Shown: one piece after another, positions 28,331 to 43,358 of the stretch
Layout of the letters: each line of letters begins with the position of its first letter
How positions within the stretch are numbered: position 1 is the first letter of the stretch
Virus record (IMG/VR): IMGVR_UViG_3300028364_000014
Span: 173,911-237,910 of that record
Reading direction: 5' to 3' (one strand)
DNA: 64,000 nucleotides
Notes under the pieces: generated by a model
Database searches by the model: none
Told to the model about the DNA's origin: nothing
What the model saw: only the letters and a program-made list of their open reading frames with translations
Translations under genes and position numbers: made by a program

Positions 28331-28831
28331 TTACATTAACCTCAGTCTTCTATCTATTTCAGGAGTTAATAAATGGAGCACATCAGATAATACACCCTTA
28401 CCTTCTGAACAGTTTATCATTTCACTATTATCAACTTTAAATAATCCTTTAGGAGCACTAATAGTATAACAGCTAGCTTCAGCTAAATTCATACATTCTA
28501 TATCAGATAACTTACTTCCAATGTACAGTAAGTCCTCAGGCTGCATATTATATCTTGGTAATATATTACTTGTTAAAATCTTACGTTTCGAATCTCTAGA
28601 TTTTACGTAGAAGAAAGGAATACTCCTTTTCTGCATAACCCCTAAAGATATATTAGGGTCGGTAGAAAGAAAAACAAAAGTAAATACCTTTTTTAACTCA
28701 TTAATAGCCTCAAAGTCCCTTTCGCAGTAATTTTTAAACAATACATTATTTAAATTATCCAAAGCTAATACACCATCAGTTATAATCCCGTCTACCTCAC
28801 TAACTATTATATCTATTTTAGTTAAATCCAT
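28331..28831 (-). CDS. KdsC/YrbI-like HAD protein with degenerate catalytic motifs
   Basis: SEVDGIITDG (canonical DxDG), YIGSKLSD (canonical GDDxxD), GKGVL. Confidence 0.7.
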   Translation of the reverse strand: MDLTKIDIIVSEVDGIITDGVLALDNLNNVLFKNYCERDFEAINELKKVFTFVFLSTDPNISLGVMQKRSIPFFYVKSRDSKRKILTSNILPRYNMQPEDLLYIGSKLSDIECMNLAEASCYTISAPKGLFKVDNSEMINCSEGKGVLSDVLHLLTPEIDRRLRLM

Positions 28832-28836
28832 TATAT

Positions 28837-29016
28837 TTAATCTCCAATATTATACTTTTCTTTAACCCTTCTAAGTTTTAAGAGTACCTCTTCTTTTTCT
28901 CTATTAATACGTGCTGAATACTCTCTTAAAACAACTCCAGCCCGTAGGCTTAATTCTTTGGTCTTTTGTAATTTTTTAAGCTGTTCATCTGTATAACCAT
29001 ATTTATTTTTGCCCAT
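28837..29016 (-). CDS. small basic hypothetical protein (59 aa, not in the ORF track)
   Basis: MGKNKYGYTDEQLKKLQK...; fills the gap exactly; GAGG upstream. Confidence 0.55.
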   Translation of the reverse strand: MGKNKYGYTDEQLKKLQKTKELSLRAGVVLREYSARINREKEEVLLKLRRVKEKYNIGD

Positions 29017-29019
29017 AGT

Positions 29020-29958
29020 TTACCTCTTCTTTATTCCTGTAGGACTAACTTCCTTCAAACGTCTACCGCATTTATTACAATTTACTCTCTTTTGAAAACC
29101 ATCAATTACTTCTTTACCACAACTACTACATACGTAATTTACTTCCAAATTTTCGTAAACCAATTGATTCATTTTTAAAAACTCTTTTTGTTCTTTTAAT
29201 TGCGTCATTAATTCTGAAATTTTAAAATCAATATCAGGGATAATAGTTGCTAGTGTTCTATCACAAAGAGACGAAGTCTCAATAGGTATAACTTTAATAT
29301 TTAAATCATAAACTTTTGAAATCATTTTTACCAACTCATATTTTGATACAGAAGATGGTGAGTAAATATGTCTTACACCGCACCAAAATAAATCATGTTT
29401 AATTATTTTTTCACATATTTTCGCAAACTGAAGACAAGTAATCCCATTCCAATAATGATTAGTAAAACCATTTACTTTTTTATTTTTGTTTGACTTTACC
29501 CATTCTAATAAAGAAAGTTTATTATTTATCTCTTCCCCTAGGATTGATGTACGTATTACAGTAGAATTAAGAGGCTCACCTAATGATTTTGACTTACCAT
29601 AGTCATCTAAAGAAGTATGATCCGAAACTTCTGTGTAACTCCCTTCTGAGCCATCAAACACACAATCTGATGTAGGATGAATTAACTTAGCTTCCCTATT
29701 GTAACAAAACTCTTGTACCTTCAAAGGAAATGCAGTATTAATTATAGAAAATTGTTGTTGACTAGTATTACCCCTCTGCGGAATCCTTCCTATACAATTT
29801 ATAACTACATCACCACTTTTAACATCCAGTTCATATAAACTATTGTCATCAGCCCTCAAAGTTTGTCTCGTTGTGCCGATGGTATTAAAGTTTTTTTTCA
29901 AATAGGTATATACATATCTTCCTAACATACCGTTTTTACCTAAAACTATAATTTTCAT
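29020..29958 (-). CDS. RmlD-like NDP-sugar 4-reductase (SDR) with C-terminal Zn ribbon
   Basis: GKNGMLG, INCIG, TSDCVFDG, YGKSK, IRTS; C-terminal CSSC...CNKC. Confidence 0.85.
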   Translation of the reverse strand: MKIIVLGKNGMLGRYVYTYLKKNFNTIGTTRQTLRADDNSLYELDVKSGDVVINCIGRIPQRGNTSQQQFSIINTAFPLKVQEFCYNREAKLIHPTSDCVFDGSEGSYTEVSDHTSLDDYGKSKSLGEPLNSTVIRTSILGEEINNKLSLLEWVKSNKNKKVNGFTNHYWNGITCLQFAKICEKIIKHDLFWCGVRHIYSPSSVSKYELVKMISKVYDLNIKVIPIETSSLCDRTLATIIPDIDFKISELMTQLKEQKEFLKMNQLVYENLEVNYVCSSCGKEVIDGFQKRVNCNKCGRRLKEVSPTGIKKR

Positions 29959-32045
29959 ACTAAAAATCCCCCATTATTAAGCAACTTCGTTAAGTATTCT
30001 TGGGACTGTACATCGTCAGAAGAAGAAAAACTATCAAAAAGCACTTTAGGTTTTGAGCTTAAATGACTATAGTCTCTACCCATATCAAGCTCTGGCAACA
30101 TAATGTAATAATCCTCATTAAACACATGTGCTCTATGCGACTCATGCTCAGAAATTAAAACCTCGTGTTTCTTTTCTCCTTCACGTAAACCTATTATATC
30201 TATTGAAGTATGTTCATTACCGTAATGATTTATTAACACTTTAGCTAAATCACCGATATAGAACCTAGGCATATTCATTACAAACGTCTCTCCACCCACA
30301 CTATTTTCTGTGGCCTGAAATAATAAAGTTATAGCCTCAGGCAGTGTAAGAAAAAATCTTGTCATGTCAGCATCTGTGACTGTTATTTTATTAAACTGTT
30401 TTATCTGATCTATAAACAAAGGTACTACACTTCCATTAGACCCAAGCACATTACCACCTCTAATGCACACGAAGTCTGTATCTTTAGATAATGTGTTGGC
30501 ATGAATGATTAATTTTTCTCCTACGGCTTTTGTGAAACCATAGGTGTTGGTTGGGGCTACAGCCTTATCTGTACTAACATCAATGACCTTCTTTATCTTA
30601 TGTTTAATAGCTGAATTTATCACATTTATTGTACCAGTTATATTAGTTTTTATAGCTTCCTGTGGCTGATTTTCACATACAGGTACATGTTTTAGGGCTG
30701 CACAATTATGTGTAGCATAACCATACACATTGTAGGTATGATCTCCAGATACACTTAAATTATATACTACGACCTTTTTCTTTTTTTTACTTACGCTTTT
30801 GACAAGATAAAAAATATAATCATCAGTTATAAAATGTTTATAACTATTGGTTGAGCCATCAACATAAAAATTTTTATTTTTATTACTACTACCTATAGAA
30901 ATTTGATAAGTTTGTTTAAGATTTTCTTTTTTAACAGTTCTTCCACCTATAATTAAATCTTTTTTCGCTCTTGGTAATTTCATAAACCCTGTAGGAATAT
31001 TAATCATGCCAAACAATAATCTTAATTGATATGCCAAATTTTCAGATACTGTAGACATTTTACCATTAGAATAACACCCATCACCACAGAAGTACCCTAG
31101 CAATAACTGTTCAATTTTATTCATATCTTTTAATTTAAAAACCCACGATGGAATTATTTTATTTTCTGCCCCTTTACCAAACTCTTCAAATTTTTTTACT
31201 ATGTCTTTACCACACACCGTAATGGTACAAGAATTGTGATTAGTGTAGTAACGACTTCCTTTTTTTCCAAAATTTTCCAATAAAATATTTTCAACATCAG
31301 TAAGATAATCATCTTCTTTACTGTTAAAAGTAAATCTAACCGCATATTTACGTAAGTCTCCTTCCGCAAGGTAATATCCGAACAACCTCATCATTGCACT
31401 GTTATATTTTGTGTCTTCAGAATTTATTCTTACCTTTGGTATCGCAATATAATCACCTTTTTGTATTTCACCTGCCTTAATCCACTCAGCGCTATCTTTT
31501 TTATAATGTTCTGGGCATTCTCCCTTTAATTTATTATTACATGCAGGAGAACACGCAGTTCTATATGATTTTGGACACTGTTTAGAAGGTTTCCATACAA
31601 AATGTGTATGATCACTTGTAGATGTTATAGGAATATTAGAAAAATAAGAAGCAACATCTACCATCTCTTCATCAATTTTACGACTTATTAAGTTTTCAAC
31701 TTTATTTAGTCGCCCATCAGATGAAAAAACATAATCATTTATTTTAACATCCTCTATATTTTTAACTTCATTTTCACAAACAACTTTAGTTTTAACTGGA
31801 AAACAATGATACACATAATCTATACCCATACTAAATAATCTATCAATAGCTTCTGCATCTCTAACATCTCCTATTATAAACTTAAGTCTATCATCATTGA
31901 ACTTTCTATCAGTAGTCACTTGAGCTAATTCCCCTCTTGACAATAATATAATCATCTTTGGATCTTTGTCAAGCAACTGCTTTGTTAATTCATGAGCCCA
32001 TGAACCTGTCCCACCTGTAATCAATATTGTTTTATCTTTAAACAT
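29955..32045 (-). CDS. UDP-GlcNAc 4,6-dehydratase (FnlA/CapE/PseB-like) with intein
   Basis: ITGGTGS, GDVRD, H|CAALKHVP, STDKAV...YG.TK, RGGNVLGSNGSVVPLF, MTRFFL, GLREGEK.HE. Confidence 0.9.
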   Translation of the reverse strand: MFKDKTILITGGTGSWAHELTKQLLDKDPKMIILLSRGELAQVTTDRKFNDDRLKFIIGDVRDAEAIDRLFSMGIDYVYHCFPVKTKVVCENEVKNIEDVKINDYVFSSDGRLNKVENLISRKIDEEMVDVASYFSNIPITSTSDHTHFVWKPSKQCPKSYRTACSPACNNKLKGECPEHYKKDSAEWIKAGEIQKGDYIAIPKVRINSEDTKYNSAMMRLFGYYLAEGDLRKYAVRFTFNSKEDDYLTDVENILLENFGKKGSRYYTNHNSCTITVCGKDIVKKFEEFGKGAENKIIPSWVFKLKDMNKIEQLLLGYFCGDGCYSNGKMSTVSENLAYQLRLLFGMINIPTGFMKLPRAKKDLIIGGRTVKKENLKQTYQISIGSSNKNKNFYVDGSTNSYKHFITDDYIFYLVKSVSKKKKKVVVYNLSVSGDHTYNVYGYATHNCAALKHVPVCENQPQEAIKTNITGTINVINSAIKHKIKKVIDVSTDKAVAPTNTYGFTKAVGEKLIIHANTLSKDTDFVCIRGGNVLGSNGSVVPLFIDQIKQFNKITVTDADMTRFFLTLPEAITLLFQATENSVGGETFVMNMPRFYIGDLAKVLINHYGNEHTSIDIIGLREGEKKHEVLISEHESHRAHVFNEDYYIMLPELDMGRDYSHLSSKPKVLFDSFSSSDDVQSQEYLTKLLNNGGFLV
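30705..31805 (-). mobile_element. intein (367 aa) with LAGLIDADG endonuclease in the dehydratase
   Basis: Starts CFPVKT; YYLAEGD and YFCGDG blocks; ends VYNLSV...YATHN followed by C. Confidence 0.9.
31945..31972 (-). promoter_or_regulatory. promoter-motif copy inside the dehydratase CDS
   Basis: aatata 31945-31950, tgtcaa 31967-31972, N16 spacing. Confidence 0.55.
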
Positions 32046-32514
32046 TGTATACTCCTACAAAATAATTATCCAAACCAGTTAAACCAGTAATTCTATTCCA
32101 TCCTATAAAATCGTCTGTAACCCAAAGAGATTTATGATGATCGTACTCATTTTTATAACACCACAACTTAGGATTATTTACATTTATTGAATTATCCGTC
32201 CACCATAATGGTGTCAATAATATAATATTTCTACATGTAATATTTTTTGCTTGTTCTAATATAATACATCCCCGCTCTTTGTCAAGGTGCTCTATAAAAT
32301 CTATCATTAATACGACATCAAAACTATTTTTCAAAAAAGGTAAATCTTTTTCTGTTAAATCTAATAAAATATCAGGATTAACCTTGTCCCAAGCATCTAA
32401 CGTAATTACTTTATTACATACTAAATCAGAAGAACGTCGCTTGTCTCCACATCCTACATCAATAACATTATCTTCCTTCTGTACATAAGCCTTAATCAAA
32501 TCATTTATATTCAT
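32038..32514 (-). CDS. class I SAM-dependent methyltransferase
   Basis: VIDVGCG, FDVV...IEHL. Confidence 0.8.
   Translation of the reverse strand: MNINDLIKAYVQKEDNVIDVGCGDKRRSSDLVCNKVITLDAWDKVNPDILLDLTEKDLPFLKNSFDVVLMIDFIEHLDKERGCIILEQAKNITCRNIILLTPLWWTDNSINVNNPKLWCYKNEYDHHKSLWVTDDFIGWNRITGLTGLDNYFVGVYNV
32258..32285 (-). promoter_or_regulatory. promoter-motif copy inside the methyltransferase CDS
   Basis: aatata 32258-32263, tgtcaa 32280-32285, N16 spacing. Confidence 0.6.
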
Positions 32515-32517
32515 AGT

Positions 32518-33315
32518 TTATTCTCCTATAAAACTATTTTTAACTTTATAATTAGATGATTTTACACACTCATCGTACAACCTTCTATTAGTAGCTTCCT
32601 TACTAGGTATAGCGTTATGCTTATGAAATTGGTGAATACAAAAAGGACTCTCTATAAATTTAATGTCCATATTCTTTTTACTAACCCTAGCAGCAAACTC
32701 AGTGTCATCGTAACCATAACCATTAGCGAACCGTTCATCAAATCCTCCTAGGTCTAGTAAGTCTTTAGTAGGTATGGATGTAAGAAAATTATAATGTGCT
32801 GGCCTATAAATAGGATGTATAAACCAAGAATTATCTTTACCCACCTCAATAGTACTTTTAGCACGTAGTTTTACAACTATATTATCCACATCTAATTTGT
32901 TCGAAGCCTCTTCACTTAATGAATAGCAACAAAATACAAGGTATTGATTATCCTTAGAATTATTGTTAACAAAAGATAAAACGTCACCAACATGTAAGCA
33001 TTCTGGTGCTTGTATTATTACTATATCCCCTCTAATTAAACTAAATCCCATGTTGAATGGTATACAAGGATTTATATGGTGCTTATCTTCAGGTTCTATT
33101 CTTACTAATTTAACGAAACTAAATTCATCAGCAAAGTCTTCTATACGTTGGGAAGGTTCACTCGCATCATCCACTATTATATATTCAAAATCCTTATATA
33201 CTGACTGCTTCATAGTTTTCAAAGTCTTTAATAAAACCTCTTTACGATTATGATAAGCAGACACTATTGATATTTTTGTCATATTAATTAAACACCTTAT
33301 ATAAAATTTTTTCAA
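32518..33315 (-). CDS. GT2-family glycosyltransferase (probable start 33282)
   Basis: ISIVSAYHNR, IVDDAS, GGFDERF..GYGYDD. Confidence 0.85.
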   Translation of the reverse strand: MKKFYIRCLINMTKISIVSAYHNRKEVLLKTLKTMKQSVYKDFEYIIVDDASEPSQRIEDFADEFSFVKLVRIEPEDKHHINPCIPFNMGFSLIRGDIVIIQAPECLHVGDVLSFVNNNSKDNQYLVFCCYSLSEEASNKLDVDNIVVKLRAKSTIEVGKDNSWFIHPIYRPAHYNFLTSIPTKDLLDLGGFDERFANGYGYDDTEFAARVSKKNMDIKFIESPFCIHQFHKHNAIPSKEATNRRLYDECVKSSNYKVKNSFIGE

Positions 33316-34190
33316 ACTGATCTACTCTATTCATTACACTGTGGTTCTCATGAACAAACCTCAGGCCCTCTTCTCTAACATCCATATTAGTTATTTGGAT
33401 TTTTTAAACACTCATCCACTACACTCAAAACATTCTCTTTTGTTATTGGTATATAATGTTTATGAGCAAGCATTCCAGATAGTTTAAAATCTTCCGTCTC
33501 TTCGGCAAATAATAAAGACCCTGTTGCAGGTATTTCAAAATATTTTGCTAGTACATACTTAAATATAGAGGCTGTGGCTATACCACAGTAGTAAGAATGT
33601 AATAAATTAGAATAAGAATCACCCTGGTATTGTGGCGGTCTGTAATCAATAGTACTATGTTTCTTATTAACTATAAACTGTCGAAAAGTATATACTTCTT
33701 TATTGAGGGACCCAGACAACAAACACTTCATTATAGGCTTTTCATTTAACTTAAAATTAATATATCTTTCATGTGGAGAAAAAAAATGCAACATAGTTTC
33801 ATTTTTTGCTAGAAATTGAGGGTACATCTGCTTAAAATACTCAGCTGTCTGCGATAGTATAATATCACACCTATTAAATACTTTTATTTTATTTACTAGA
33901 CAGTCTTTATTACCATAACATTGTAAATCTCCTGACCACATTATTAATTTTATACGCTTATTAAGTTCTAAAAGTCCAGGTATCAACCCTGGTCTATTAT
34001 GATAAGGAACTGCCCACATCAAGACCACATCAGTATCATCATCTACGTAAACCTTATTAGCAAATCTTATTTCAAAATTAAATCGTTTTTGTATTTCATA
34101 CCATAAAGGAGCCATAACACTTAGCGTACTTTTATAGTCAGGTGTCCACAAATTCTCATAGAATTTAGGAATTATTATTACACCTTTCAT
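33284..34190 (-). pseudogene. CgeB/Glyco_trans_1_2-like glycosyltransferase with apparent +1 frameshift near 33387
   Basis: KYFEIPATG motif; ORF stops at NPNN*, while the expected tail MDVREEGLRFVHENHSVMNRVDQF continues in another frame (33385-33284); real or an assembly error. Confidence 0.7.
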
Positions 34191-34191: not shown

Positions 34192-34737
34192 TTATAACTC
34201 TCCTATTATTGTATAAAGAGAAGTTCGGTCATCTTTTACATACGGCTCTACGGTAACTTTTCCCTGACTACGTAATTCTCTAAACTCCTCTCTACTACTA
34301 GTGGTGTGTTGAAAATCTATAATATTTATTTTTCCATTACCAACTAAAATTTCTTCTATTTTAATATCATTATGACTAACCTCTATTCTATTTAAAGCAT
34401 CAAGTATGTATTCAACCTGATCCTGCCAATCAATAGGTCTTGAATGTTTATTTATCTCCATCCCCATGTAATCCATTACTATTGAATTAGTGTTAAAACT
34501 AATTACTTTAGGCACCCTATCAAAATCTTTCATCTTGTTCAACCAAAAAACTTCTTTATTAACAAAGTCATAATGGCTATACTTATCATGTATAACTTTT
34601 TTAACAAAGACAGCTTTAACTTGAGAAGTAACTTGTAAAGATGCATCAAGGTAATATATTATAGACGTATTATTAGATCGCATTACAGATGTATAACCTC
34701 CTATCATGCTGTCCGGGATCATCCAAAGATTTAGCAT
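34192..34737 (-). CDS. protein-kinase-like sugar/LPS kinase (probable start 34683)
   Basis: VFVKK, E..WL, HNDIKIEEIL, IIDF. Confidence 0.65.
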   Translation of the reverse strand: MLNLWMIPDSMIGGYTSVMRSNNTSIIYYLDASLQVTSQVKAVFVKKVIHDKYSHYDFVNKEVFWLNKMKDFDRVPKVISFNTNSIVMDYMGMEINKHSRPIDWQDQVEYILDALNRIEVSHNDIKIEEILVGNGKINIIDFQHTTSSREEFRELRSQGKVTVEPYVKDDRTSLYTIIGEL

Positions 34738-37803: not shown

Positions 37804-38019
37804 TTAACTCCACATATGTTCTTGGTATAAATATTCTTTTGGCATTGACAAATTCAAGCTAACATAGTTAATTTTTCCACATTTTCTACATTTTTCTATG
37901 ACCCTACATCCAGGGCAATTACCAATACCAAAACCTATTCTTTTTGTCATTTGTATTTTAATTTCCTTGTAGTCATGCCAACAGAATTTAAAAAAATTAT
38001 TAATCATTACTTTATCCAA
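37804..38019 (-). CDS. small Cys-rich hypothetical protein
   Basis: CWHDY...CPGC...CRKC. Confidence 0.5.
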   Translation of the reverse strand: MDKVMINNFFKFCWHDYKEIKIQMTKRIGFGIGNCPGCRVIEKCRKCGKINYVSLNLSMPKEYLYQEHMWS

Positions 38020-38759
38020 TCCGCTGTCTCCCTTGACATACCTACCAAATTAAAATCTGTTATACGTTCAGTAGTATTCCATTTTAACGGAGTATAATGT
38101 GTGTCATGATGTAACACAGTACAACAAGTACCACCTAACCTACCATTATGCTGTGTTCTATTTATAAGGGGACGTAAAGCTTTATAACCATACTCTTTAA
38201 AAAACGCTTGTACTGACCAATCCCAACCCCAAGCTTTATAATATTTTTTAACTAGTGTAGTATCATTCCATGCTTTCTGAAAACAGCCCTCCCAACCTTC
38301 CTTAAATGTACACCAACCGAGCCCTTCAAAAAAAGGTACCTCTTCTAAAGCAGAGTAATCCTCACCTCTAGGGTTAAACCCAAACAGCCCATAGGACATA
38401 AATGTAGTAGGCTTATCTCTAAAATTATTATAATACCAATTAGCTAAATCAATAGCATCAGGAGCTAATAAAAAATCATCCTCTAAATGAACATTAAATG
38501 TAGACCCTGCTGCAAAGGCAGAACTCAGCACATTAAACATATTATCAATAGCACCTTGATGATCGTTTCTACCAATGGAGTTTTTTTTATACAAAATATT
38601 TAAAGCTAATTTAGACTCTTTTAATATTTTAATACATTCCGGAGAATTTTCGGCGCTACAAAAAATTGTATAATCATCCAGCTTTTGTTTTTCTAAACAT
38701 ATTAAAAACTCTTTCAAGTAATTTGGTCTATATCCAACAGGAAAAGTTATAGTTTTCAT
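38007..38759 (-). CDS. GT-A fold glycosyltransferase
   Basis: YRPNYL, HLEDD, GWDW, RTQHNG. Confidence 0.7.
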   Translation of the reverse strand: MKTITFPVGYRPNYLKEFLICLEKQKLDDYTIFCSAENSPECIKILKESKLALNILYKKNSIGRNDHQGAIDNMFNVLSSAFAAGSTFNVHLEDDFLLAPDAIDLANWYYNNFRDKPTTFMSYGLFGFNPRGEDYSALEEVPFFEGLGWCTFKEGWEGCFQKAWNDTTLVKKYYKAWGWDWSVQAFFKEYGYKALRPLINRTQHNGRLGGTCCTVLHHDTHYTPLKWNTTERITDFNLVGMSRETADWIK

Positions 38760-39394
38760 ATTTTTATCCTTATTTTTTTATATTTATCAATTATATCCGT
38801 AGCGTAAATACACTTTTTCAGCCCCACTAAATTAGCCTTTATAGGATCAGTTAATAAGGGTTGAACTGCCAGCCAAGGCATCAGTCCGAGAATAAATACC
38901 TCATTACATAATAAATCATGTACATAAATAAACGCTGTTAGTGCCTCTAGCTCCTTATTTTTAAACAATGAGTCTTCTCCATACTTATTATGGAGATTGG
39001 ATTTTTGATAAGTCCAAGAAGGGTTGTCATTACCTGTATAAATTAAAGTAGATTTACTGCATGTTTTTATATGTATGCCAGGAAAAGTACTTTTTGGGTA
39101 TGGTAAGTCACAAGACCAACTTTTCTTACCAACAGGAAGCACTGTTAAATCAGGAGCCGCACTTGGATAGCCGAGCTTTTTTTCCAAATATTCGGCCACA
39201 ATAAACTCTCCAACTTTACCAATTACAATATCGTGGTGTGCTTTTAACGCTCTTCTTTCATTTTTATAATAAGTTTTACTTTGTAAACTCGCACTGGCAA
39301 ACCTACGTGATTTTTCTACATAGTCATTAAATTTTAATTTATCTACCGTATATGGGTCTAAAAATAATACAGTGTTATCGCTATAACAATACAT
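38756..39394 (-). CDS. PD-(D/E)xK-like hypothetical nuclease
   Basis: GKVGEFIV..YL...PD...HIKT. Confidence 0.45.
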   Translation of the reverse strand: MYCYSDNTVLFLDPYTVDKLKFNDYVEKSRRFASASLQSKTYYKNERRALKAHHDIVIGKVGEFIVAEYLEKKLGYPSAAPDLTVLPVGKKSWSCDLPYPKSTFPGIHIKTCSKSTLIYTGNDNPSWTYQKSNLHNKYGEDSLFKNKELEALTAFIYVHDLLCNEVFILGLMPWLAVQPLLTDPIKANLVGLKKCIYATDIIDKYKKIRIKI

Positions 39395-39401
39395 AATTCC
39401 C

Positions 39402-40241
39402 TTAAAAATTACTTATAAGTAGTTCTGTTTTAAAATTACGGGCTGTGTTTATAGAGTAATTTATATTATTAATAATTTCTATATTTGCCCAACCCATATA
39501 CAACGAACTTATTTCTTCACAATTATCGTAAGACAAGGTCCAAAAATGCTTAGTGTTTTTTAAAGAGTCAGCCAATCTTATATGATCTTGATAATTAAAC
39601 CCACACTGATATAACTCTTGCCCCTTAACAAAATAAGGTGGGTCTAAGTACAACAAAGCAGTAACTTCGTCATCAGTAATCAACTCAGAAAAATCCAAAG
39701 ACGAACATTTTATATGTTTGTTTTTAAATAATGAATTTAATTTATTAATATTTTTAGATAAATGCCCTGGGGACCATCTACAATCTATTTTATATTTAGA
39801 TTTCTGTTCTTTTCCGCCTAAAGGACCTCCGGATTTAGTTCCTAGTCCTGAAAAAGAAAGTTGATGAATAGTTAATTTCTTAAACCCATACAGTAACCTT
39901 TCTTCGTTGGTCAAGTCATTAAATTTTATATCTTCCAATAGTTGTTTCTTAGCAGTATAAAAATAATCCACAGAAGGGGTAAACTTCTGTATCAATTCTA
40001 TTAACCCGATAGGGTTATTTATAACAGTAAACCACAAACAAGCTATCCCAAAATCAAAATCATTTATCCAAAAACTATTTATACCTGATATAGTGAGTAA
40101 CTCAGTGGTAATTTTTCCACCACCTAAAAAAGGTTCCCTGTATTCAATTATTGTATCATCCTTGCTCAATCCTTCACATAACTTACTAAGTATCTGGTCC
40201 CTTAGTTTAGCTTTACCTCCTGGGTATCTAAAAAACGACAT
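39402..40241 (-). CDS. Dam-like (D12 class) N6-adenine DNA methyltransferase
   Basis: RYPGGK, EPFLGGG, INDFD, YLDPPY, LSYD, ELLISN. Confidence 0.9.
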   Translation of the reverse strand: MSFFRYPGGKAKLRDQILSKLCEGLSKDDTIIEYREPFLGGGKITTELLTISGINSFWINDFDFGIACLWFTVINNPIGLIELIQKFTPSVDYFYTAKKQLLEDIKFNDLTNEERLLYGFKKLTIHQLSFSGLGTKSGGPLGGKEQKSKYKIDCRWSPGHLSKNINKLNSLFKNKHIKCSSLDFSELITDDEVTALLYLDPPYFVKGQELYQCGFNYQDHIRLADSLKNTKHFWTLSYDNCEEISSLYMGWANIEIINNINYSINTARNFKTELLISNF

Positions 40242-40245
40242 AAAA

Positions 40246-41364
40246 TTAAATATCCTTTATTTCAGTAATAATTTTATCTGCTATAACTTCCCAAGAAAAA
40301 TTCTCTTTAATATAATTCTTTAGGGTCATTCCTTTCTCTTTTGCTTTATTTTGATTTTCATATACATACTTCATTTTGTTAGCCCCGTCTAATACATCAG
40401 GCTCAGCCCATAACTGTGTTCCATCATACCACGGACTCCAAGGCATGCTATGTACGGGCGTCAACATATGGTTTACTAGATAACTATTGTCTTCTTTTGC
40501 ATACTCTGTTGCGCCGCCAAATCCGGTAACTACGATTGGATTACCAGCAGCTCCAGCAGTAAAACTGGAGAGTCCAAAACCTTCACCCCTATCTAAAGAC
40601 ACATAACAATCACCCCTAGTATGTAAAGAGGTTATTTCATCCTCAGACAGCATATTACCAATAAGAACCATCTTAGGAAAATCAGACATAGGCATATTAT
40701 ACTTTAGAGATTTGATCATTCTAATCACACCTTCTTTTTGCTGATCCGAGTAGTCATTACCGTATGTTTTTAAAACCAGTACTACATCTTTATTACCATT
40801 AAATGCGTGGTAATAAGCCCTTATGAGTGCTTGAGGGCACTTTCGTTCAGTCCACTGACAGATATTATAAAAAACAAAATCAGTGTCTTTTACACCAGCA
40901 ATTTTAAAAGAATCAAAAGAATCAAAAGCTTTAGTACTAATTCCGTGAGGAACTACCCCTATCGGAATAGTCACACCACTATCTTTAAATATCTCCCTAT
41001 TCCACTCACAGCCTACTAATACTTTATCAACAGAATTATTTATAAAAGGCGTCCAATCAGAATGTAACTTAGTAGTCTCCCAAATTGTAAACCCACAATT
41101 TATTTTACCCACTTGTCTATACTTAGACCAAAATTCTGGAGTAGTGTGTATAAAATTAATATTATATAGAATTGAATTTTCAACTAAACTTTTTAATAGT
41201 TTACCATCTTCTCCTAAGTCTGGCTTGCTGTTTTCAAAAGAAATAGGATTGATAGTAATAGGCACACCGGCTTGGTGTAACGCTAGTATATTACCCCTAC
41301 ACGCTTTACCATAACCGCTTGAATCAAAAACCGGTCCTGTATATCTAATTCCTGTTATATCCAT
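40246..41364 (-). CDS. GT4 (GT-B) glycosyltransferase
   Basis: SGYGKA, PHG, RGEGFGL...A..G.P. Confidence 0.85.
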   Translation of the reverse strand: MDITGIRYTGPVFDSSGYGKACRGNILALHQAGVPITINPISFENSKPDLGEDGKLLKSLVENSILYNINFIHTTPEFWSKYRQVGKINCGFTIWETTKLHSDWTPFINNSVDKVLVGCEWNREIFKDSGVTIPIGVVPHGISTKAFDSFDSFKIAGVKDTDFVFYNICQWTERKCPQALIRAYYHAFNGNKDVVLVLKTYGNDYSDQQKEGVIRMIKSLKYNMPMSDFPKMVLIGNMLSEDEITSLHTRGDCYVSLDRGEGFGLSSFTAGAAGNPIVVTGFGGATEYAKEDNSYLVNHMLTPVHSMPWSPWYDGTQLWAEPDVLDGANKMKYVYENQNKAKEKGMTLKNYIKENFSWEVIADKIITEIKDI

Positions 41365-41985
41365 TTATACCTTCTCCTTCGTTATAAAATATGGATGGTC
41401 TACTTGAGCTAGTACTTGCTTACAAAATGAAGGCCATTCAGGCTCTTTATGTTTATATCGTTGGTGTACCATATGCTGTAAATTCATATAATTTAAATGA
41501 ATAGTTCTTATGTACATATAACCAGATGGTAGATTACGTTTTAATTTAATTAAGTCAGCTCCTTCTTCAAGCAGTTCTTTATACCTATTTAAAATCACCT
41601 CATCTACTAAATGATCTATACCATTAGCTAGTTCTGATTTCTTTAACATATGCATAGTAGATGTTGATTGGACCGCTGCTATAGTAGTGTAAGTAGCTTG
41701 TTGCTGCCACCAATCGCAGGGGGCTTGGACAATAAGGTCTACATTCATAGCTCTAAGAAATTTATTATGTCCCATACCTTTAAAGGCCATTTTTTTAGCC
41801 CGCTCTAACATTTGATAATACAACTCATTATAATTACCAACACCGTCTAAAAAAATAGAGACGCCTTCATCCAAACCCTTTACTGTCTTATCAAAAGCTA
41901 ACCCCATTCCTACCAGAGCAGACAAGAAATTACCTGATGATTCATGTAATTTTTTAACTTTAATCATATTGTCCTCCATAACCAT
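41365..41985 (-). CDS. divergent ThyX-fold protein (probable start 41967)
   Basis: GH.KFLR...AP..WW.Q..TY...STSTMH, RNLP, NY...R..H...EW; lacks the RHRX7S motif. Confidence 0.5.
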   Translation of the reverse strand: MVMEDNMIKVKKLHESSGNFLSALVGMGLAFDKTVKGLDEGVSIFLDGVGNYNELYYQMLERAKKMAFKGMGHNKFLRAMNVDLIVQAPCDWWQQQATYTTIAAVQSTSTMHMLKKSELANGIDHLVDEVILNRYKELLEEGADLIKLKRNLPSGYMYIRTIHLNYMNLQHMVHQRYKHKEPEWPSFCKQVLAQVDHPYFITKEKV

Positions 41986-42020
41986 CAGTTACACCGGACG
42001 GAACCTATGCAACTGATGGT
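41981..42020 (-). promoter_or_regulatory. leader hairpin between a promoter and the RBS of the ThyX-fold gene
   Basis: Perfect 10-bp inverted repeat ACCATCAGTT/AACTGATGGT with a partly pairable 20-nt interior. Confidence 0.6.
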
Positions 42021-42036
42021 GTTATTATTACTATAT

Positions 42037-42064
42037 AATATAATACATTTTTCTAGTTTGTCAA
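42037..42064 (-). promoter_or_regulatory. promoter TTGACA-N16-TATATT
   Basis: aatata 42037-42042, tgtcaa 42059-42064. Confidence 0.8.
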
Positions 42065-42065
42065 T

Positions 42066-43358
42066 CTAAAAAGTTTCAGCTGTTATAACCTTTCTGTCTA
42101 TACCAATTTCATTGACCGCAGTAGGATTTTTAAGGTCTCTTACAGCCTTATCAAAAATACTAACCCAAGCTTTGGCTATCTTACCCTGCCAATTCAATTC
42201 CGACTTCACCCACCCATAGGCTGTCTCCGCTTTCGCCTCAGCTTCTACGTAATTGTTGTAAATATACACCATCTTCTTCGCCATATCTTCGACATCAACA
42301 AGCGGCCTAATAACTTCATTGTCATTTGGTAGAACAGTATGTAATCCAGGAGTAGTCCCACTATCAATTAGGTAGCCCTTATCTTCAGTAATGTATTCTC
42401 CCATAGCTGTATTATTAGGCATTAAAACAGGGGTCTTAGTAGCCATAGCCTCTACCCAAGAAAGACCAAAACCCTCCCCTAAAGTCGTACTAACAACAAG
42501 ATCAGAGACATTGTATATTAAATTAACAATTTCTTTAGGATACCCTTGATTAGGCCCAAAATTCTCTGGAAAAACAACATCTTCTCCAACAACTAGACCA
42601 TAGGACTTACAAACCTCATCCAGACTCCAACCCTGGTCTTTCATTGCCATATGTAGATATAAAATAGAAGTTGGCACTTCCTTTCTAAACTCCACAAATG
42701 CAGCTATAGTTCTAGGTATATCTTTTCTATGCTGATTTCGATTAACATTAGTAATAATAAATTTATCTGCGTGCTTACCAAAATACTGTGCCTTAAACTT
42801 TTTAATAATATCCTTAGGTAGAGGTTTAAAATCATCAATATTAGCGCCATGAGGCACTACTTGCATGTCTTGTACAGCAGGGTATACTTTCTTAGCCTCG
42901 TTAGCTCCAAACTTGGAATAAGCCACTAAGTAATCAACGGCATCCACATTTTTAATCCATTGCTCTTTAGGAACACCATCAATAGGAAAATAACAAATTG
43001 ATTTAAAGGCTTTCCCACTCGCTATTAGGGCTGGTATAAGTTTAGGTAAAAAATCTAAAATAAAAGTATCCTGCAAACAAAACAAGATGTCATACTCCAT
43101 TTGCTGGGCCATGCTTACAAATTTCTGTCTTCCGTATGGGTCCTTTTGTGTGTTAGTACCGGCTGGGAACTGGCGATAAGGGAAGGTATGCGGATCGCCC
43201 CAGTAGTTGATAGCAAATATATCGATATCATATCTTCCAGTTTTAAATAACGCTTCACAAATATTTCTAGACACAGATCCAAAACCTGTTGCACATGAGA
43301 CTGCATCAGCATATACAAGTACTTTAGTTTTCTTATTTACTTTTTTGTTTTTTGCCAT
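42066..43358 (-). CDS. GT4 (GT-B) glycosyltransferase
   Basis: TGFG, PHG, NRNQHRKD, GEGFGL..VEAMA. Confidence 0.88.
   Translation of the reverse strand: MAKNKKVNKKTKVLVYADAVSCATGFGSVSRNICEALFKTGRYDIDIFAINYWGDPHTFPYRQFPAGTNTQKDPYGRQKFVSMAQQMEYDILFCLQDTFILDFLPKLIPALIASGKAFKSICYFPIDGVPKEQWIKNVDAVDYLVAYSKFGANEAKKVYPAVQDMQVVPHGANIDDFKPLPKDIIKKFKAQYFGKHADKFIITNVNRNQHRKDIPRTIAAFVEFRKEVPTSILYLHMAMKDQGWSLDEVCKSYGLVVGEDVVFPENFGPNQGYPKEIVNLIYNVSDLVVSTTLGEGFGLSWVEAMATKTPVLMPNNTAMGEYITEDKGYLIDSGTTPGLHTVLPNDNEVIRPLVDVEDMAKKMVYIYNNYVEAEAKAETAYGWVKSELNWQGKIAKAWVSIFDKAVRDLKNPTAVNEIGIDRKVITAETF

What the first reader, a model, noticed from the sequence alone, without database searches (positions are those of the whole stretch)
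28331..43358. Self-contained glycosylation island in a phage, with an apparent route to a 2-acetamido-2,6-dideoxy-L-hexose
Seen: about 15 kb co-directional cluster with a 4,6-dehydratase, RmlD-like reductase, 2-epimerase, six GT-like genes (GT2, CgeB-like, GT32-like, GT-A, two GT4), two SAM methyltransferases and a kinase-like gene, set between DnaX/PolA and the recombination genes. Known: the FnlA/B/C (Cap5E/F/G, WbjB/C/D) trio makes UDP-L-FucNAc; the Vibrio WbvB/WbvR/WbvD variant with an RmlD-like reductase makes UDP-L-RhaNAc/L-QuiNAc, and Megavirus uses a similar route for its fibril glycans. The epimerase here has the FnlC-type GTRPE.IRLS...QNYDY signature. Inference: this phage makes its own rare amino-sugar donor and builds a methylated/phosphorylated glycan. 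I see no flippase, Wzy or initiating phosphoglycosyl transferase, so virion proteins (or DNA) are a more likely target than host LPS.
Basis: partly seen in the sequence, partly recalled or inferred. Interest (0 to 1): 0.85.

Follow-up and report, generated by a model that had tools for sequence, protein, structure and literature searches.

The report
Jumbo-phage rare-sugar glycan gene island
A large uncultured phage carries a 15-kb block of soluble enzymes that most likely turns the host's UDP-GlcNAc into a rare 6-deoxy-L-N-acetylhexosamine and builds a decorated glycan with it; this resembles what giant viruses do for their fibrils, but what the glycan is attached to is still unknown.

Summary
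It lies between DnaX/PolA and recombination genes, on the last 64 kb of a 238-kb IMG/VR contig.

The dehydratase is interrupted by a 366-aa LAGLIDADG intein. The block also holds a Dam methylase, a divergent ThyX-fold protein, a degenerate KdsC-like HAD protein and a strongly conserved orphan protein.

The sugar route is not FnlABC. The dehydratase keeps the catalytic Tyr, like PseB and Megavirus Mg534, where FnlA/CapE have Met. The reductase is RmlD-like rather than CapF/FnlB-like. Its bacterial relatives sit in dehydratase-reductase-epimerase operons. The best fit is therefore a WbvBRD / Mg534-536-type route to UDP-L-RhaNAc and UDP-L-QuiNAc.

Related phages keep the same frame around a variable cassette that carries a sulfotransferase, a pyruvyl transferase, GDP-mannose dehydratase and other glycosyltransferases.

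No membrane, flippase or polymerase genes are present. The acceptor is unresolved: virion protein is favoured, and DNA or host envelope are not excluded.

This is a new variant of a known kind, of moderate interest.

The parts
28331..28831 (-). KdsC/KDN-9-P-phosphatase-like HAD protein (166 aa). It is probably degenerate, with Glu in place of the nucleophile Asp (SEVDGIITDG). It is conserved next to the reductase in L003.
   Evidence: NCBIfam KDN-9-PPhBT E 6e-8 and KdsC family E 7e-8, both below their cut-offs. The motif was read. The L003 homolog is 54% identical.
29020..29958 (-). RmlD-like SDR, predicted UDP-4-keto-6-deoxy-L-HexNAc 4-reductase (WbvR/Mg535-like). It has GxxGxxG and YGxSK motifs. 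A ~45-aa C-terminal CxxC...CxxC zinc-ribbon tail is unique to this phage.
   Evidence: RmlD_sub_bind E 7.5e-19. rmlD equivalog 52.9 bits against a cut-off of 224, and no FnlB/WbcJ hit. Alignment with relatives of 239-272 aa, plus one 492-aa GT2-reductase fusion in L006. Bacterial relatives lie in D-R-E operons.
29955..32045 (-). UDP-GlcNAc 4,6-dehydratase (inverting, PseB/Mg534-like, Tyr-type), 696 aa including an intein. N-extein 31806-32045, C-extein 29958-30707.
   Evidence: Polysacc_synt_2 E 6.6e-91. PseB 282.8 bits and FnlA 237.7 bits, both below cut-off. NTYGFTK aligns with the YxxxK of FlaA1 and Pen, against NAMGISK in FnlA and CapE. Intein-free relatives are 329-338 aa. Tree.
30708..31805 (-). 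Class-1 intein (366 aa, residues 81-446) with a LAGLIDADG homing endonuclease. It has Cys1, a terminal His-Asn and a +1 Cys. It is inserted between DYVYH and (C)AALKHV.
   Evidence: LAGLIDADG_3 E 1.1e-8; Intein_splicing and Hint hits. Boundaries come from the alignment with intein-free homologs. Related intein-bearing alleles are P0391-P0394, and P0399 has an intein at a second site.
32038..32514 (-). Small SAM methyltransferase (158 aa). It is conserved immediately upstream of the dehydratase in L013.
   Evidence: Methyltransf_11 E 3.2e-5. 52% identical homolog next to the L013 dehydratase.
32518..33315 (-). GT2 (GT-A) glycosyltransferase with a beta4GalT-like C-terminal region.
   Evidence: Glycos_transf_2, Glyco_tranf_2_2 and Glyco_transf_7C. 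Homologs lie next to the epimerase in L006, L007, L009 and L013.
33387..34190 (-). CgeB-like GT-B glycosyltransferase (267 aa).
   Evidence: No Pfam hit. Atlas PF13524 clusters at 0.96, structure TM 0.81.
34192..34737 (-). Small RIO1/Kdo-kinase-like kinase (181 aa), a candidate sugar or glycan kinase. It is specific to this phage.
   Evidence: RIO1 E 4.4e-7 and Pkinase E 9e-4. No homolog in the related loci.
34673..35317 (-). Class I SAM methyltransferase (214 aa).
   Evidence: Methyltransf_23 E 3.7e-8.
35317..36150 (-). GT32-like DXD glycosyltransferase. Part of the conserved frame.
   Evidence: Gly_transf_sug E 1.5e-8. 63-74% identical in L003, L004 and L008.
36150..36725 (-). Orphan all-helical protein (191 aa) that always lies beside the epimerase in close relatives. 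Function unknown.
   Evidence: 255 close homologs only, none with a Pfam domain. AF2 pLDDT 84, no PDB match.
36735..37802 (-). Non-hydrolysing UDP-HexNAc 2-epimerase, CapG/FnlC/WbvD-like.
   Evidence: Epimerase_2 E 9.8e-87. wecB equivalog 251.6 bits against a cut-off of 210. CapG 7ya2 324 bits against E. coli WecB 123 bits.
37804..38019 (-). Small CxxC...CxxC ORF (71 aa), unknown function.
   Evidence: Weak phrog_8294 hit only. Sequence.
38007..38759 (-). GNT-I/MGAT2-like GT-A glycosyltransferase with an EDD motif.
   Evidence: Atlas clusters carrying PF03071/PF05060 at 0.98. 60-79% identical in L003, L004 and L008.
38756..40241 (-). Inserted pair absent from all related loci: an unknown 212-aa ORF (38756-39394) and a D12-class N6-adenine DNA methyltransferase (39402-40241).
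   Evidence: MethyltransfD12 E 2.7e-22. No homolog in L003-L014.
40246..41364 (-). GT4 (GT-B) glycosyltransferase 'GT4a'.
   Evidence: GT4-conflict and Glycos_transf_1. phrog_2170 E 4e-26. Homologs in Streptomyces phages lie beside RNR and ThyX-like genes.
41365..41985 (-). Divergent ThyX-fold protein (206 aa) without the RHR motif. It is either a thymidylate-synthase relative that belongs to nucleotide metabolism or a base-modifying enzyme.
   Evidence: Atlas 0.97. AF2 pLDDT 91.7. Foldseek against ThyX prob 1.0, TM 0.71. Family of 1564 representative clusters. Motif columns.
42066..43358 (-). GT4 (GT-B) glycosyltransferase 'GT4b'.
   Evidence: Glycos_transf_1 E 9e-11. 40% identical to the Tetrasphaera phage TJE1 GT and 31% to the Synechococcus phage S-CBS4 GT, which lie in packaging and head modules.
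42035..42064 (-). Promoter-like element TTGACAAA-N8-ATGTATTATATTAT, 50 nt upstream of the ThyX-fold gene. Further copies are at 32256-32285 and 28295-28324.
   Evidence: 9 copies on the minus strand against 0.03 expected. Alignment.

Best explanation
This is a cytoplasmic glycan-biosynthesis island of an uncultured jumbo phage (at least 238 kb).

**Sugar pathway (inferred from homology)**
1. The intein splices out of the dehydratase precursor.
2. The Tyr-type, PseB/Mg534-like enzyme converts host UDP-GlcNAc into UDP-2-acetamido-2,6-dideoxy-beta-L-arabino-hexos-4-ulose, by 4,6-dehydration and C5 inversion.
3. The RmlD-like reductase reduces C4, probably after C3 epimerisation as in Megavirus Mg535. 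This gives UDP-L-RhaNAc.
4. The CapG/WbvD-like 2-epimerase converts part of that to UDP-L-QuiNAc.

**Glycan assembly (inferred)**
Six soluble glycosyltransferases assemble an oligosaccharide from this donor and host NDP-sugars. They are one GT2, one CgeB-like, one GT32-like, one GNT-I-like and two GT4 enzymes. Two SAM methyltransferases and a small kinase decorate the product.

**Acceptor (inferred)**
None of these proteins is membrane-bound, and no lipid-carrier, flippase or polymerase genes are present. The acceptor should therefore be a cytoplasmic macromolecule, most likely virion protein.

**Diversification**
The middle of the island is a swappable cassette. Relatives carry a sulfotransferase, a pyruvyl transferase, GDP-mannose dehydratase or other glycosyltransferases there. 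The lineage therefore diversifies the glycan while keeping the donor pathway.

**Shown versus inferred**
- Shown here: gene content, family assignments, the active-site type, the intein boundaries, synteny and the absence of membrane proteins.
- Inferred: substrate, stereochemistry, splicing, glycan structure and acceptor.
For: **Gene content and families.**

**Dehydratase.**
- It has the YxxxK motif, as in FlaA1 (2gn4), Pen (6bwc) and Mg534 (PMC9614988 read).
- Close intein-free relatives are about 330 aa.
- It belongs to a Tyr-type clade distinct from the Met-type bacterial partners.

**Reductase.**
- It has the RmlD fold and motifs. Intein-lineage relatives measure 259-272 aa, and Mg535 is 270 aa.
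- A profile scan of 185,579 genomes gave 80 loci with 30-48% identity. A dehydratase is adjacent in 45, a 2-epimerase in 44, and both in 26, typically in the order D-R-E.
- This is the gene set that makes UDP-L-QuiNAc in V. cholerae and is conserved in Rickettsia (PMC6765297).

**Epimerase.** CapG scores 324 bits and the next hit, 4hwg, 283 bits, against 123 bits for WecB.

**Co-occurrence in phages.** The three genes occur together in L003, L006-L009 and L013.

**Variable cassette.** It encodes glycan-decorating enzymes in L003 and L008.

**Soluble machinery.** No TM segments in the island.

**Leaning toward a virion target.**
- In L010-L012 the homologous epimerase, dehydratase and GT2 genes lie between the portal and major head genes and the tape measure.
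- GT4b's best isolate homologs lie between portal and head protease in S-CBS4. In TJE1 they lie beside terS/terL, together with a sugar epimerase, a methyltransferase and a nucleotidyltransferase.

**Conservation.** Inteins have colonised two different conserved sites of this dehydratase in the lineage. That fits a conserved, selected gene.
Against: - No enzyme has been assayed. The dehydratase and reductase fail every NCBIfam equivalog cut-off, so stereochemistry (RhaNAc/QuiNAc versus 6-deoxy-L-AltNAc, PneNAc or FucNAc) is open.
- The epimerase passes the wecB equivalog cut-off. It could simply make UDP-ManNAc from UDP-GlcNAc.
- I could not compare directly with WbvR or Mg535 sequences.
- The island sits in the replication module. 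It carries the same promoter-like element as DnaX, ligase, RNase HII and clamp genes. That is not what one expects of a late, virion-directed function.
- GT4a homologs in Streptomyces phages sit beside RNR, ThyX-like and DNA-methylase genes.
- A ThyX-fold gene lies between the two GT4 genes here and in L003 and L008.
- No structural genes or acceptor candidates were identified in the window.
Confidence: 0.55

Rival explanations
1. DNA hypermodification. All or part of the island, especially GT4b, the ThyX-fold protein and GT4a at 40246-43358, glycosylates a modified pyrimidine in phage DNA. The ThyX-fold enzyme would make the modified nucleotide. The GT-B enzymes would add sugars on DNA, supplied by the phage's own NDP-sugar genes.
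For: - Known phage DNA-glycan clusters combine a thymidylate-synthase homolog, GT-B (BshA/MshA-like) transferases, a HAD phosphatase, a protein-kinase-like sugar kinase and NDP-sugar genes (PMC13326640).
- Here a ThyX-fold protein lacking the RHR motif sits between two GT4 genes whose best NCBIfam hits include BshA, MshA and glycogen synthase. The trio is kept in L003 and L008.
- The island lies in the replication and nucleotide-metabolism module and shares its promoter class.
- GT4a homologs neighbour RNR, ThyX-like and DNA-methylase genes in Streptomyces phages.
Against: - No ThyA-type hydroxymethylase or hydroxylase, dCTPase or dNMP kinase was found in the window.
- The phage encodes UDG, dUTPase and dCMP deaminase, which together with a ThyX-like enzyme look like ordinary dTMP supply.
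- L004 keeps both GT4 genes without the ThyX-fold gene, and L005-L013 keep the sugar trio without either.
- tblastn of GT4a and GT4b found no RB69, T4-like, DLP3 or Pootjesviridae homolog.
- Sulfo-, pyruvyl- and methyl-decorating cassettes are typical of surface glycans.
- The genome assembled in at least five metagenomes, which argues weakly against a heavy modification.
Confidence: 0.2
2. Host-envelope remodelling. The phage makes the rare sugar and transferases to alter host LPS, capsule or S-layer glycan during infection, for example to block superinfection. It would borrow the host's lipid carrier, flippase and polymerase.
For: - Large polymorphic sugar and GT clusters in jumbo cyanophages have been interpreted this way (PMC7824862).
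- L-QuiNAc and L-RhaNAc are classical O-antigen sugars (PMC6765297).
- Early or middle-type promoters would suit modification of the host before lysis.
- The cassette varies between relatives.
Against: - No initiating phosphoglycosyl transferase, Wzx, Wzy, ligase, ABC exporter or any multi-TM protein occurs in 64 kb.
- All six GTs are predicted soluble.
- Homologous clusters in other phages sit inside head and tail modules.
- The phage looks lytic (no integrase in the window), so any benefit from serotype conversion would be brief.
Confidence: 0.17
3. The three enzymes are a true FnlA/FnlB/FnlC (Cap5E/F/G) set that makes UDP-L-FucNAc.
For: - The epimerase is closest to CapG.
- The dehydratase scores 161-163 bits to CapE and FnlA structures.
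Against: - The dehydratase has Tyr, not the Met that marks FnlA, WbjB and CapE (PMC5774825).
- FnlA equivalog: 231-238 bits against a cut-off of 730.
- The reductase does not hit the FnlB/WbcJ model NF047837. It is a ~260-aa RmlD-like catalytic domain, not a ~370-aa CapF-type enzyme.
Confidence: 0.05
4. The dehydratase is PseB and starts a pseudaminic-acid (nonulosonic acid) pathway. The KdsC-like HAD protein would then be a sugar-phosphate phosphatase of that route.
For: - PseB is the best NCBIfam model (283-300 bits).
- The HAD protein resembles KDN-9-P and Kdo-8-P phosphatases.
Against: - The score is below the PseB cut-off of 407.75.
- No PseC aminotransferase, PseH, PseG, PseI synthase or PseF cytidylyltransferase was found in the window.
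- The HAD protein has Glu in place of the nucleophile Asp.
- The dehydratase is always paired with the RmlD-like reductase.
Confidence: 0.03

Closest known systems
Megavirus chilensis Mg534-Mg539 fibril glycosylation cluster (UDP-L-RhaNAc / UDP-L-QuiNAc; PMC9614988)
   Same: - A virus-encoded trio: a Tyr-type (YxxxK) UDP-GlcNAc 4,6-dehydratase/5-epimerase, a ~270-aa RmlD-like reductase and a 2-epimerase.
- The trio is clustered with glycosyltransferases and glycan-decorating enzymes. A pyruvyl transferase is present in relative L008 and methylation genes here.
- The cluster content is clade-specific.
   Different: - The host virus is a tailed phage, not a nucleocytoviricot.
- The dehydratase is more similar to Pen, FlaA1 and CapE (161-176 bits) than to Mg534 4tqg (126 bits).
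- It carries an intein.
- No UDP-GlcNAc synthesis genes are present.
- The acceptor (fibrils in Megavirus) is unknown here.
- I made no direct sequence comparison with Mg535 or Mg536.
Bacterial WbvB/WbvR/WbvD (V. cholerae O37; Rickettsia Rc0456-0458) UDP-L-QuiNAc operon
   Same: The same three enzyme types are present. The phage reductase family is found in bacterial dehydratase-reductase-epimerase operons.
   Different: - The bacterial partner dehydratases are almost all Met-type (NAMGxxK). The phage enzyme is Tyr-type and falls in another clade.
- The phage genes are not contiguous: the epimerase lies 4.7 kb from the dehydratase-reductase pair.
- The phage has no O-antigen export or polymerisation genes.
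FnlA/B/C = Cap5E/F/G = WbjB/C/D (UDP-L-FucNAc)
   Same: Both start from UDP-GlcNAc with a hexameric-type short dehydratase, and the 2-epimerase is closest to CapG.
   Different: The dehydratase active-site type and the reductase family both differ. See the membership test.
Virion glycosylation genes of actinobacteriophages and cyanosiphoviruses (Freeman et al. 2023, as cited in PMC12619734; S-CBS4, TJE1)
   Same: Soluble GT4 or GT2 transferases, with or without methyltransferases, are encoded by the phage. GT4b is 31-40% identical to the S-CBS4 and TJE1 enzymes.
   Different: Those genes sit in head or packaging modules and number 1-3. Here there are 18 ORFs plus a dedicated rare-sugar pathway, inside the replication module.
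Jumbo cyanophage sugar/GT clusters (P-SSM2 type; PMC7824862)
   Same: Large, polymorphic clusters of NAD-dependent epimerases/dehydratases, kinases and several GT families in big phages.
   Different: - The enzyme set differs. There is no PfkB kinase or nucleotidyltransferase, and this island has a specific D-R-E trio.
- Those clusters were interpreted as host-polysaccharide modification, which is not favoured here.
Phage DNA glycan hypermodification clusters (RB69, DLP3, RL38J1; PMC13326640)
   Same: A thymidylate-synthase-superfamily-like gene next to GT-B transferases, a HAD-like protein, a kinase-fold protein and phage-made NDP-sugar.
   Different: The neighbour here has a ThyX fold, not a ThyA fold. 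No dCTPase or dNMP kinase was seen. The transferases have no detectable homologs in those phages.

Membership tests
FnlA (UDP-GlcNAc 4,6-dehydratase/5-epimerase/3-epimerase; CapE, WbjB) | Score at or above the NCBIfam TIGR04130 equivalog cut-off (730 bits) | tested here: not met
   237.7 bits for the window protein. 231-237 bits for intein-free relatives P0001 and L003.
FnlA (UDP-GlcNAc 4,6-dehydratase/5-epimerase/3-epimerase; CapE, WbjB) | Met replaces the SDR catalytic Tyr (M134-x3-K; PMC5774825) | tested here: not met
   NTYGFTK in the window aligns with NAMGISK of 4j2o and 3vvb. All phage relatives keep Tyr.
FnlB / CapF / WbjC-type reductase | Match to NF047837 (UDP-2-acetamido-2,6-beta-L-arabino-hexul-4-ose reductase, about 370 aa) | tested here: not met
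   None of the reductases scanned hit this model (window protein; four relatives). The window protein and three of those relatives hit only rmlD, at 26-64 bits; the L005 relative hit nothing. Catalytic domain about 260 aa.
FnlC / CapG / WbvD-type 2-epimerase | Closer to CapG than to WecB/MnaA-type UDP-GlcNAc 2-epimerases; GTRPExIRLS and QNYDY motifs | tested here: met
   CapG 7ya2 324 bits against 1f6d WecB 123 bits, with the motifs aligned. 43% against 31% identity to the two S. aureus paralog loci. Substrate not testable.
WbvB/WbvR/WbvD-type pathway (UDP-L-RhaNAc to UDP-L-QuiNAc) | An RmlD-like 4-reductase genetically coupled to a UDP-GlcNAc 4,6-dehydratase and a 2-epimerase | tested here: met
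   D and R are adjacent and E lies in the same island. The trio recurs in 6 related phage loci. Among bacterial relatives of the reductase, 45 of 80 have D, 44 of 80 have E, and 26 of 80 have both.
WbvB/WbvR/WbvD-type pathway (UDP-L-RhaNAc to UDP-L-QuiNAc) | The dehydratase is of the WbvB (Met-type, C5+C3 epimerising) kind | tested here: not met
   The Tyr-type clade is separate from the 33 Met-type bacterial partners.
WbvB/WbvR/WbvD-type pathway (UDP-L-RhaNAc to UDP-L-QuiNAc) | Product is UDP-L-RhaNAc / UDP-L-QuiNAc | not testable with these tools
   Needs an enzyme assay with NMR or LC-MS.
Megavirus Mg534/Mg535/Mg536-type pathway | A Tyr-type YxxxK dehydratase, a ~270-aa RmlD-like bifunctional 3-epimerase/4-reductase and a 2-epimerase | tested here: inconclusive
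   Motif and sizes agree (PMC9614988). Mg534 (4tqg) is only the 11th-best PDB hit at 126 bits.
PseB (pseudaminic acid pathway) | TIGR03589 equivalog cut-off (407.75 bits) and the presence of PseC/H/G/I/F partners | tested here: not met
   283-300 bits. No partner genes in 64 kb.
Class 1 intein with LAGLIDADG homing endonuclease | N-terminal Cys, C-terminal His-Asn, +1 Cys/Ser/Thr, Hint and LAGLIDADG domains, and precise interruption of a conserved host-protein motif | tested here: met
   C81...HN446/C447. LAGLIDADG_3, Intein_splicing and Hom_end_hint hits. Homologs are colinear across the gap. Splicing itself was not tested.
Wzx/Wzy- or ABC-dependent O-antigen/capsule locus | An initiating phosphoglycosyl transferase, a flippase or ABC exporter, and a polymerase (all multi-TM proteins) | tested here: not met
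   No ORF in the window has more than one hydrophobic segment. No such Pfam hits.
Phage DNA glycan hypermodification cluster | A ThyA-type dNMP hydroxymethylase or hydroxylase, a dCTPase or dNMP kinase, and DNA glycosyltransferases | tested here: inconclusive
   Only a divergent ThyX-fold protein is present. No ThyA, dCTPase or dNMP kinase occurs in the window. The other 174 kb of the genome were not examined.
ThyX (flavin-dependent thymidylate synthase) | ThyX fold plus the RHRxxSxxxxSxR signature | tested here: inconclusive
   The fold is met (prob 1.0, TM 0.71). There is no Pfam or NCBIfam hit for this protein. The RHR motif is absent, and the Arg residues common in the family are replaced by Cys and Thr here.

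The most novel reading that the evidence does not exclude
The island, or at least its GT4b / ThyX-fold / GT4a part fed by the phage-made 6-deoxy-L-HexNAc, builds a complex, decorated glycan on a pyrimidine base of the phage DNA. The divergent ThyX-fold enzyme, rather than a ThyA homolog, would create the attachment point. This would be a new chemical class of DNA hypermodification and a new activity for the ThyX fold.
Probability: 0.12. Interest if true: 0.9.

Novelty: new variant of a known kind. Interest (0 to 1): 0.55.

Why it matters
If the prediction holds, tailed phages, and not only giant eukaryotic viruses, would make bacterial-type rare amino sugars (L-RhaNAc/L-QuiNAc) themselves and assemble strain-variable, methylated, phosphorylated, sulfated or pyruvylated glycans without any membrane machinery.

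The lineage is abundant in metagenomes. It includes hundreds of close dehydratase homologs and contigs of 300-500 kb. It keeps a fixed donor pathway around a swappable cassette. That makes it a natural system for asking what phage glycans are for: shielding from defence or predation, adhesion, or DNA protection.

The Tyr-type dehydratase plus RmlD-like reductase pairing also offers a second, independent test case for the Mg534/Mg535 division of labour.

Inteins at two different sites in a sugar-nucleotide dehydratase are an unusual marker of how conserved this accessory gene is in the lineage.

Tried and rejected
- **Megablast of the 15 kb against GenBank phages.** No match. No cultured relative is available.
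- **Bacterial O-antigen locus.** Rejected. The flanks are phage replication genes with inteins and homing endonucleases, and there are no multi-TM proteins.
- **FnlABC assignment.** Rejected.
- **Pseudaminic-acid route.** Rejected for lack of partner genes.
- **ThyX-like ORF by sequence.** Single-sequence and profile searches against PDB sequences gave nothing convincing (E 0.56 to ThyX). Only the AF2 model with Foldseek settled the fold. Context look-ups of two family members were uninformative.
- **Orphan 191-aa protein.** No Pfam or PHROG hit and no structural match (best Foldseek E 0.19). Function left open.
- **MT-dehydratase fusions as a Rosetta-stone link for the window's methyltransferase.** The fused MT domain is not significantly similar (E 0.096), so I dropped this argument.
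- **Generic sigma-70 promoter and terminator scan.** Counts are at chance level. Only the specific 30-nt motif is significant.
- **tRNA scan.** None found.
- **'Moraphage' lineage (PMC12619734).** It shares DnaJ, several core GTs, homing endonucleases and an aquatic origin. I could not test whether this phage belongs to it.
- **Reference sequences for a tree.** I could not obtain WbvR, Mg535, PseB or FnlA sequences as files. The tree uses the Tyr/Met motif as a label instead of named references.

Full report
**Observation.** The region 28331-43358 holds 18 tightly packed ORFs, all on the minus strand. GC content is the same ~31-35% as the rest of the window.

- a Polysacc_synt_2 4,6-dehydratase (29955-32045);
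- an RmlD-like SDR (29020-29958);
- an Epimerase_2 2-epimerase (36735-37802);
- six glycosyltransferases: GT2, CgeB-like GT-B, GT32-like, GNT-I/MGAT2-like GT-A and two GT4;
- two SAM methyltransferases;
- a small RIO1/protein-kinase-like ORF.

The flanks are a DnaX-like clamp loader and PolA on one side. On the other are a PD-(D/E)XK nuclease, RuvC, DnaJ, primase, DnaB, RecA and the beta clamp.

**Is it a phage?** The epimerase gene is 100% identical in two IMG/VR contigs, of 64.9 kb and 237.9 kb. By coordinate arithmetic the window is the last 64 kb of the 238-kb contig. The same sequence occurs in at least five metagenomes.

The window holds only replication, repair and nucleotide-metabolism genes: RNR, dUTPase, dCMP deaminase, ligase, RNase HII, UDG and NT5C. 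It also has three inteins (in RNR, PolA and the dehydratase) and at least eight free-standing homing endonucleases. It has no tRNA, no multi-TM protein and no cellular housekeeping operon. No structural gene was identified in the window. The phage call therefore rests on IMG/VR, the gene content and the relatives. Megablast finds no cultured relative.

1. The dehydratase ORF is 696 aa because residues 81-446 are a class-1 intein with a LAGLIDADG endonuclease. It has Cys1, His-Asn and a +1 Cys, and it is inserted between DYVYH and AALKHV. Close homologs are colinear and intein-free at 329-338 aa. Other alleles in the lineage carry the same intein or one at a second site after STDKA.
2. A D12 Dam methylase and an unknown 212-aa ORF (38756-40241) are present only in this phage. 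They look like an insertion.
3. The ORF between the two GT4 genes (41365-41985) has a ThyX fold (AF2 pLDDT 91.7; Foldseek prob 1.0, TM 0.71). It lacks the RHR signature.
4. The first ORF (28331-28831) is a KdsC-like HAD protein with Glu in place of the nucleophile Asp.
5. A 191-aa helical orphan (36150-36725) is strongly conserved beside the epimerase in relatives. It has no detectable relative of known function.

**Which sugar pathway?** The C-extein scores almost equally against four solved enzymes: Pen (6bwc, 176 bits), FlaA1/PseB (2gn4, 168), A. baumannii FnlA/WbjB (4j2o, 163) and CapE (3vvb, 161). Megavirus Mg534 (4tqg) scores 126 bits.

The alignments show that the phage enzyme keeps the SDR Tyr (NTYGFTK), like Pen and FlaA1. 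FnlA and CapE have Met there (NAMGISK). That Met is the published hallmark of the FnlA/WbjB/CapE group (PMC5774825). Mg534 has Y140-x3-K144 (PMC9614988).

Intein-free relatives score 285-300 bits on the PseB equivalog (cut-off 407.75) and 231-237 bits on FnlA (cut-off 730). The enzyme is therefore a member of neither equivalog.

The reductase hits only rmlD, weakly (53-64 bits against a cut-off of 224). It does not hit the FnlB/WbcJ reductase model. It has the GxxGxxG and YGxSK motifs. Its relatives are 239-272 aa (259-272 among the closer ones), and Mg535 is 270 aa.

A profile scan of one genome per species returned 80 bacterial and archaeal loci with 30-48% identity. In these loci a dehydratase is adjacent in 45, a 2-epimerase in 44 and both in 26, usually in the order dehydratase-reductase-epimerase. 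This is the gene set that makes UDP-L-QuiNAc via UDP-L-RhaNAc in V. cholerae and is conserved in Rickettsia (PMC6765297).

Almost all those bacterial dehydratases are Met-type. In a maximum-likelihood tree the jumbo-phage enzymes form one clade (100/100). That clade lies inside a Tyr-type group together with two Patescibacteria genomes, apart from the Met-type clade.

The epimerase is clearly CapG-like: 324 bits, against 123 bits for E. coli WecB.

My reading is a WbvBRD-like gene set with a Mg534-like division of labour. The dehydratase would do only the 4,6-dehydration and C5 inversion. The RmlD-like enzyme would do the C3 epimerisation and C4 reduction. The 2-epimerase would interconvert L-RhaNAc and L-QuiNAc. 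'A 2-acetamido-2,6-dideoxy-L-hexose' is the robust statement. The exact epimer is an inference.

**Comparative anatomy.** Twelve further IMG/VR loci carry a 54-76% identical epimerase. The two closest, L003 and L008, share the window's surroundings and its frame. That frame runs:

PD-(D/E)XK - GT4b - ThyX-fold - GT4a - GNT-I-like GT - epimerase - orphan191 - GT32 - [variable cassette] - dehydratase - reductase

In L003 the frame continues into the HAD-like gene and DnaX; the L008 locus ends inside the reductase gene.

The cassette differs in each phage:
- Window: methyltransferase, kinase, CgeB-like GT, GT2, methyltransferase.
- L003: GT2, a second GT32-like gene, methyltransferase, sulfotransferase.
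- L008: polysaccharide pyruvyl transferase with its FrhB-like partner, CgeB-like GT, FtsJ-like methyltransferase, GDP-mannose 4,6-dehydratase.

More distant contigs of 77-501 kb keep the trio plus a GT2 beside other genes. A fixed donor pathway with a swappable decorating cassette is how O-antigen loci and the clade-specific Megavirinae clusters are organised.

**What is the acceptor?** None of the 18 proteins has a TM segment, and the window has no flippase, polymerase or initiating transferase. Assembly on a cytoplasmic acceptor is therefore the simplest reading.

Evidence for virion protein:
- In L010-L012, from smaller phages, the homologous epimerase, dehydratase and GT2 genes lie between the portal, head-morphogenesis and major-head genes and the tape measure.
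- GT4b's best homologs in cultured phages lie between the portal and the head protease in Synechococcus phage S-CBS4, together with a second GT and a methyltransferase.
- In Tetrasphaera phage TJE1 they lie next to terS/terL, together with a sugar epimerase, a methyltransferase and a nucleotidyltransferase.
- Sulfation, pyruvylation and methylation are surface-glycan features.

Evidence against virion protein:
- The island is embedded in the replication module.
- A 30-nt promoter-like element (TTGACAAA-N8-ATGTATTATATTAT) occurs 9 times on the coding strand, against 0.03 expected. It precedes the DnaX, ligase, RNase HII and clamp genes. It also precedes the ThyX-fold gene, and a copy lies inside the small methyltransferase gene, 211 nt upstream of the dehydratase start.
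- GT4a homologs in Streptomyces phages sit beside RNR, ThyX-like and DNA-methylase genes.
- Recently described DNA-glycan clusters combine a thymidylate-synthase homolog, GT-B transferases and phage-made NDP-sugars (PMC13326640).

DNA glycosylation therefore remains a live rival for at least the GT4b/ThyX-fold/GT4a block. Several findings count against it:
- The window has no ThyA-type enzyme, dCTPase or dNMP kinase.
- L004 keeps the GT4 pair without the ThyX-fold gene.
- The sugar trio occurs without either in other phages.
- The transferases have no homologs in RB69, T4-like, DLP3 or Pootjesviridae phages.

Host-envelope remodelling is the published interpretation of jumbo-cyanophage sugar clusters (PMC7824862). 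It cannot be excluded but lacks any membrane component here.

My estimates are: virion protein about 0.4, DNA about 0.2, host envelope about 0.17, and the rest other or unknown.

**Known versus new.** Several kinds of virus-encoded glycan systems are already described:
- phage-encoded glycosyltransferase and sugar clusters;
- virion glycosylation in actinobacteriophages;
- DNA glycan hypermodification;
- the Megavirus L-RhaNAc/L-QuiNAc pathway.

In the literature I could search, I found no tailed-phage example of the dehydratase / RmlD-like reductase / CapG-like epimerase trio. I also found no description of this conserved-frame, variable-cassette island or of inteins in this dehydratase.

I rate it a new variant of a known kind. 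It is real and fairly widespread in one jumbo-phage lineage. Its chemistry and target remain purely predicted.

Noticed in passing
window 17456-21124 and 23970-27200: The ribonucleotide reductase and the family A DNA polymerase each carry a LAGLIDADG intein. Together with the dehydratase that makes three inteins in 64 kb.
   Followed up: partly
window 92-121, 585-614, 9653-9682, 12960-12989, 28295-28324, 32256-32285, 42035-42064, 48049-48078, 56669-56698 (all minus strand): A 30-nt promoter-like element, TTGACAAA-N8-ATGTATTATATTAT, occurs 9 times against 0.03 expected. Most copies lie 35-50 nt upstream of start codons of replication and nucleotide-metabolism genes. Its sigma-70-like -35 and extended -10 boxes argue against a Bacteroidota-type promoter and may bear on host identity.
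   Followed up: partly
window 41365-41985; family P0121-P0270: This is a large phage family (1564 representative clusters) of ~200-aa ThyX-fold proteins that lack the RHR signature. The copies in the window, L003 and P0121 have additionally lost two Arg residues common in the family. Function unknown.
   Followed up: partly
window 29020-29160 (C-terminal ~45 aa of the reductase): A CxxC...CxxC zinc-ribbon tail is fused to the reductase only in this phage. In L006 the same reductase is instead fused to an N-terminal GT2 domain (492 aa).
   Followed up: partly
window 28331-28831; L003:19246-19782: The KdsC-like HAD protein has a conserved Glu in place of the catalytic Asp, and a GS in place of GD in the last motif. 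It is possibly a non-catalytic sugar-phosphate-binding module.
   Followed up: partly
window 21134-22345, 22910-23998, 43378-44418, 52167-53210: Four paralogous CapR-repeat plus HNH endonuclease genes are scattered between core genes. One forms the upstream border of the island. Further HNH, GIY-YIG and LAGLIDADG endonucleases lie at 9679-10542, 14075-17410 and 48087-48938.
   Followed up: no
window 3956-5749: A 597-aa protein made of several PAS domains is encoded among nucleotide-metabolism genes. This is unusual for a phage.
   Followed up: no
window 56702-63873: Four large ORFs (622, 642, 728 and 400 aa) have almost no family hits. One has a SPRY domain. They lie where the AT skew changes sign. 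They may be structural or fibre-like proteins and thus candidate glycan acceptors.
   Followed up: partly
P0399 (and P0396, P0398, P0400, P0401); P0402-P0417: Some alleles of the same dehydratase carry an intein at a second site, after STDKA in the active-site loop. Other relatives are methyltransferase-dehydratase fusions of about 530 aa.
   Followed up: partly
L059, L077 (Patescibacteria genomes): The closest cellular relatives of the phage's Tyr-type dehydratase (48-53% identity) are in Collierbacteria and Nomurabacteria genomes, next to the same reductase family.
   Followed up: partly
L010:1-11549, L011:1-16324, L012:1-14464: These smaller phages carry a homologous epimerase, a short (284-aa) dehydratase and GT2 genes inside the head-tail structural module. 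No RmlD-like reductase was detected by BLAST.
   Followed up: partly
window 46453-47214: The phage encodes DnaJ. Together with several core glycosyltransferases and many homing endonucleases, this recalls the aquatic 'moraphage' jumbo lineage (PMC12619734). Membership was not tested.
   Followed up: no
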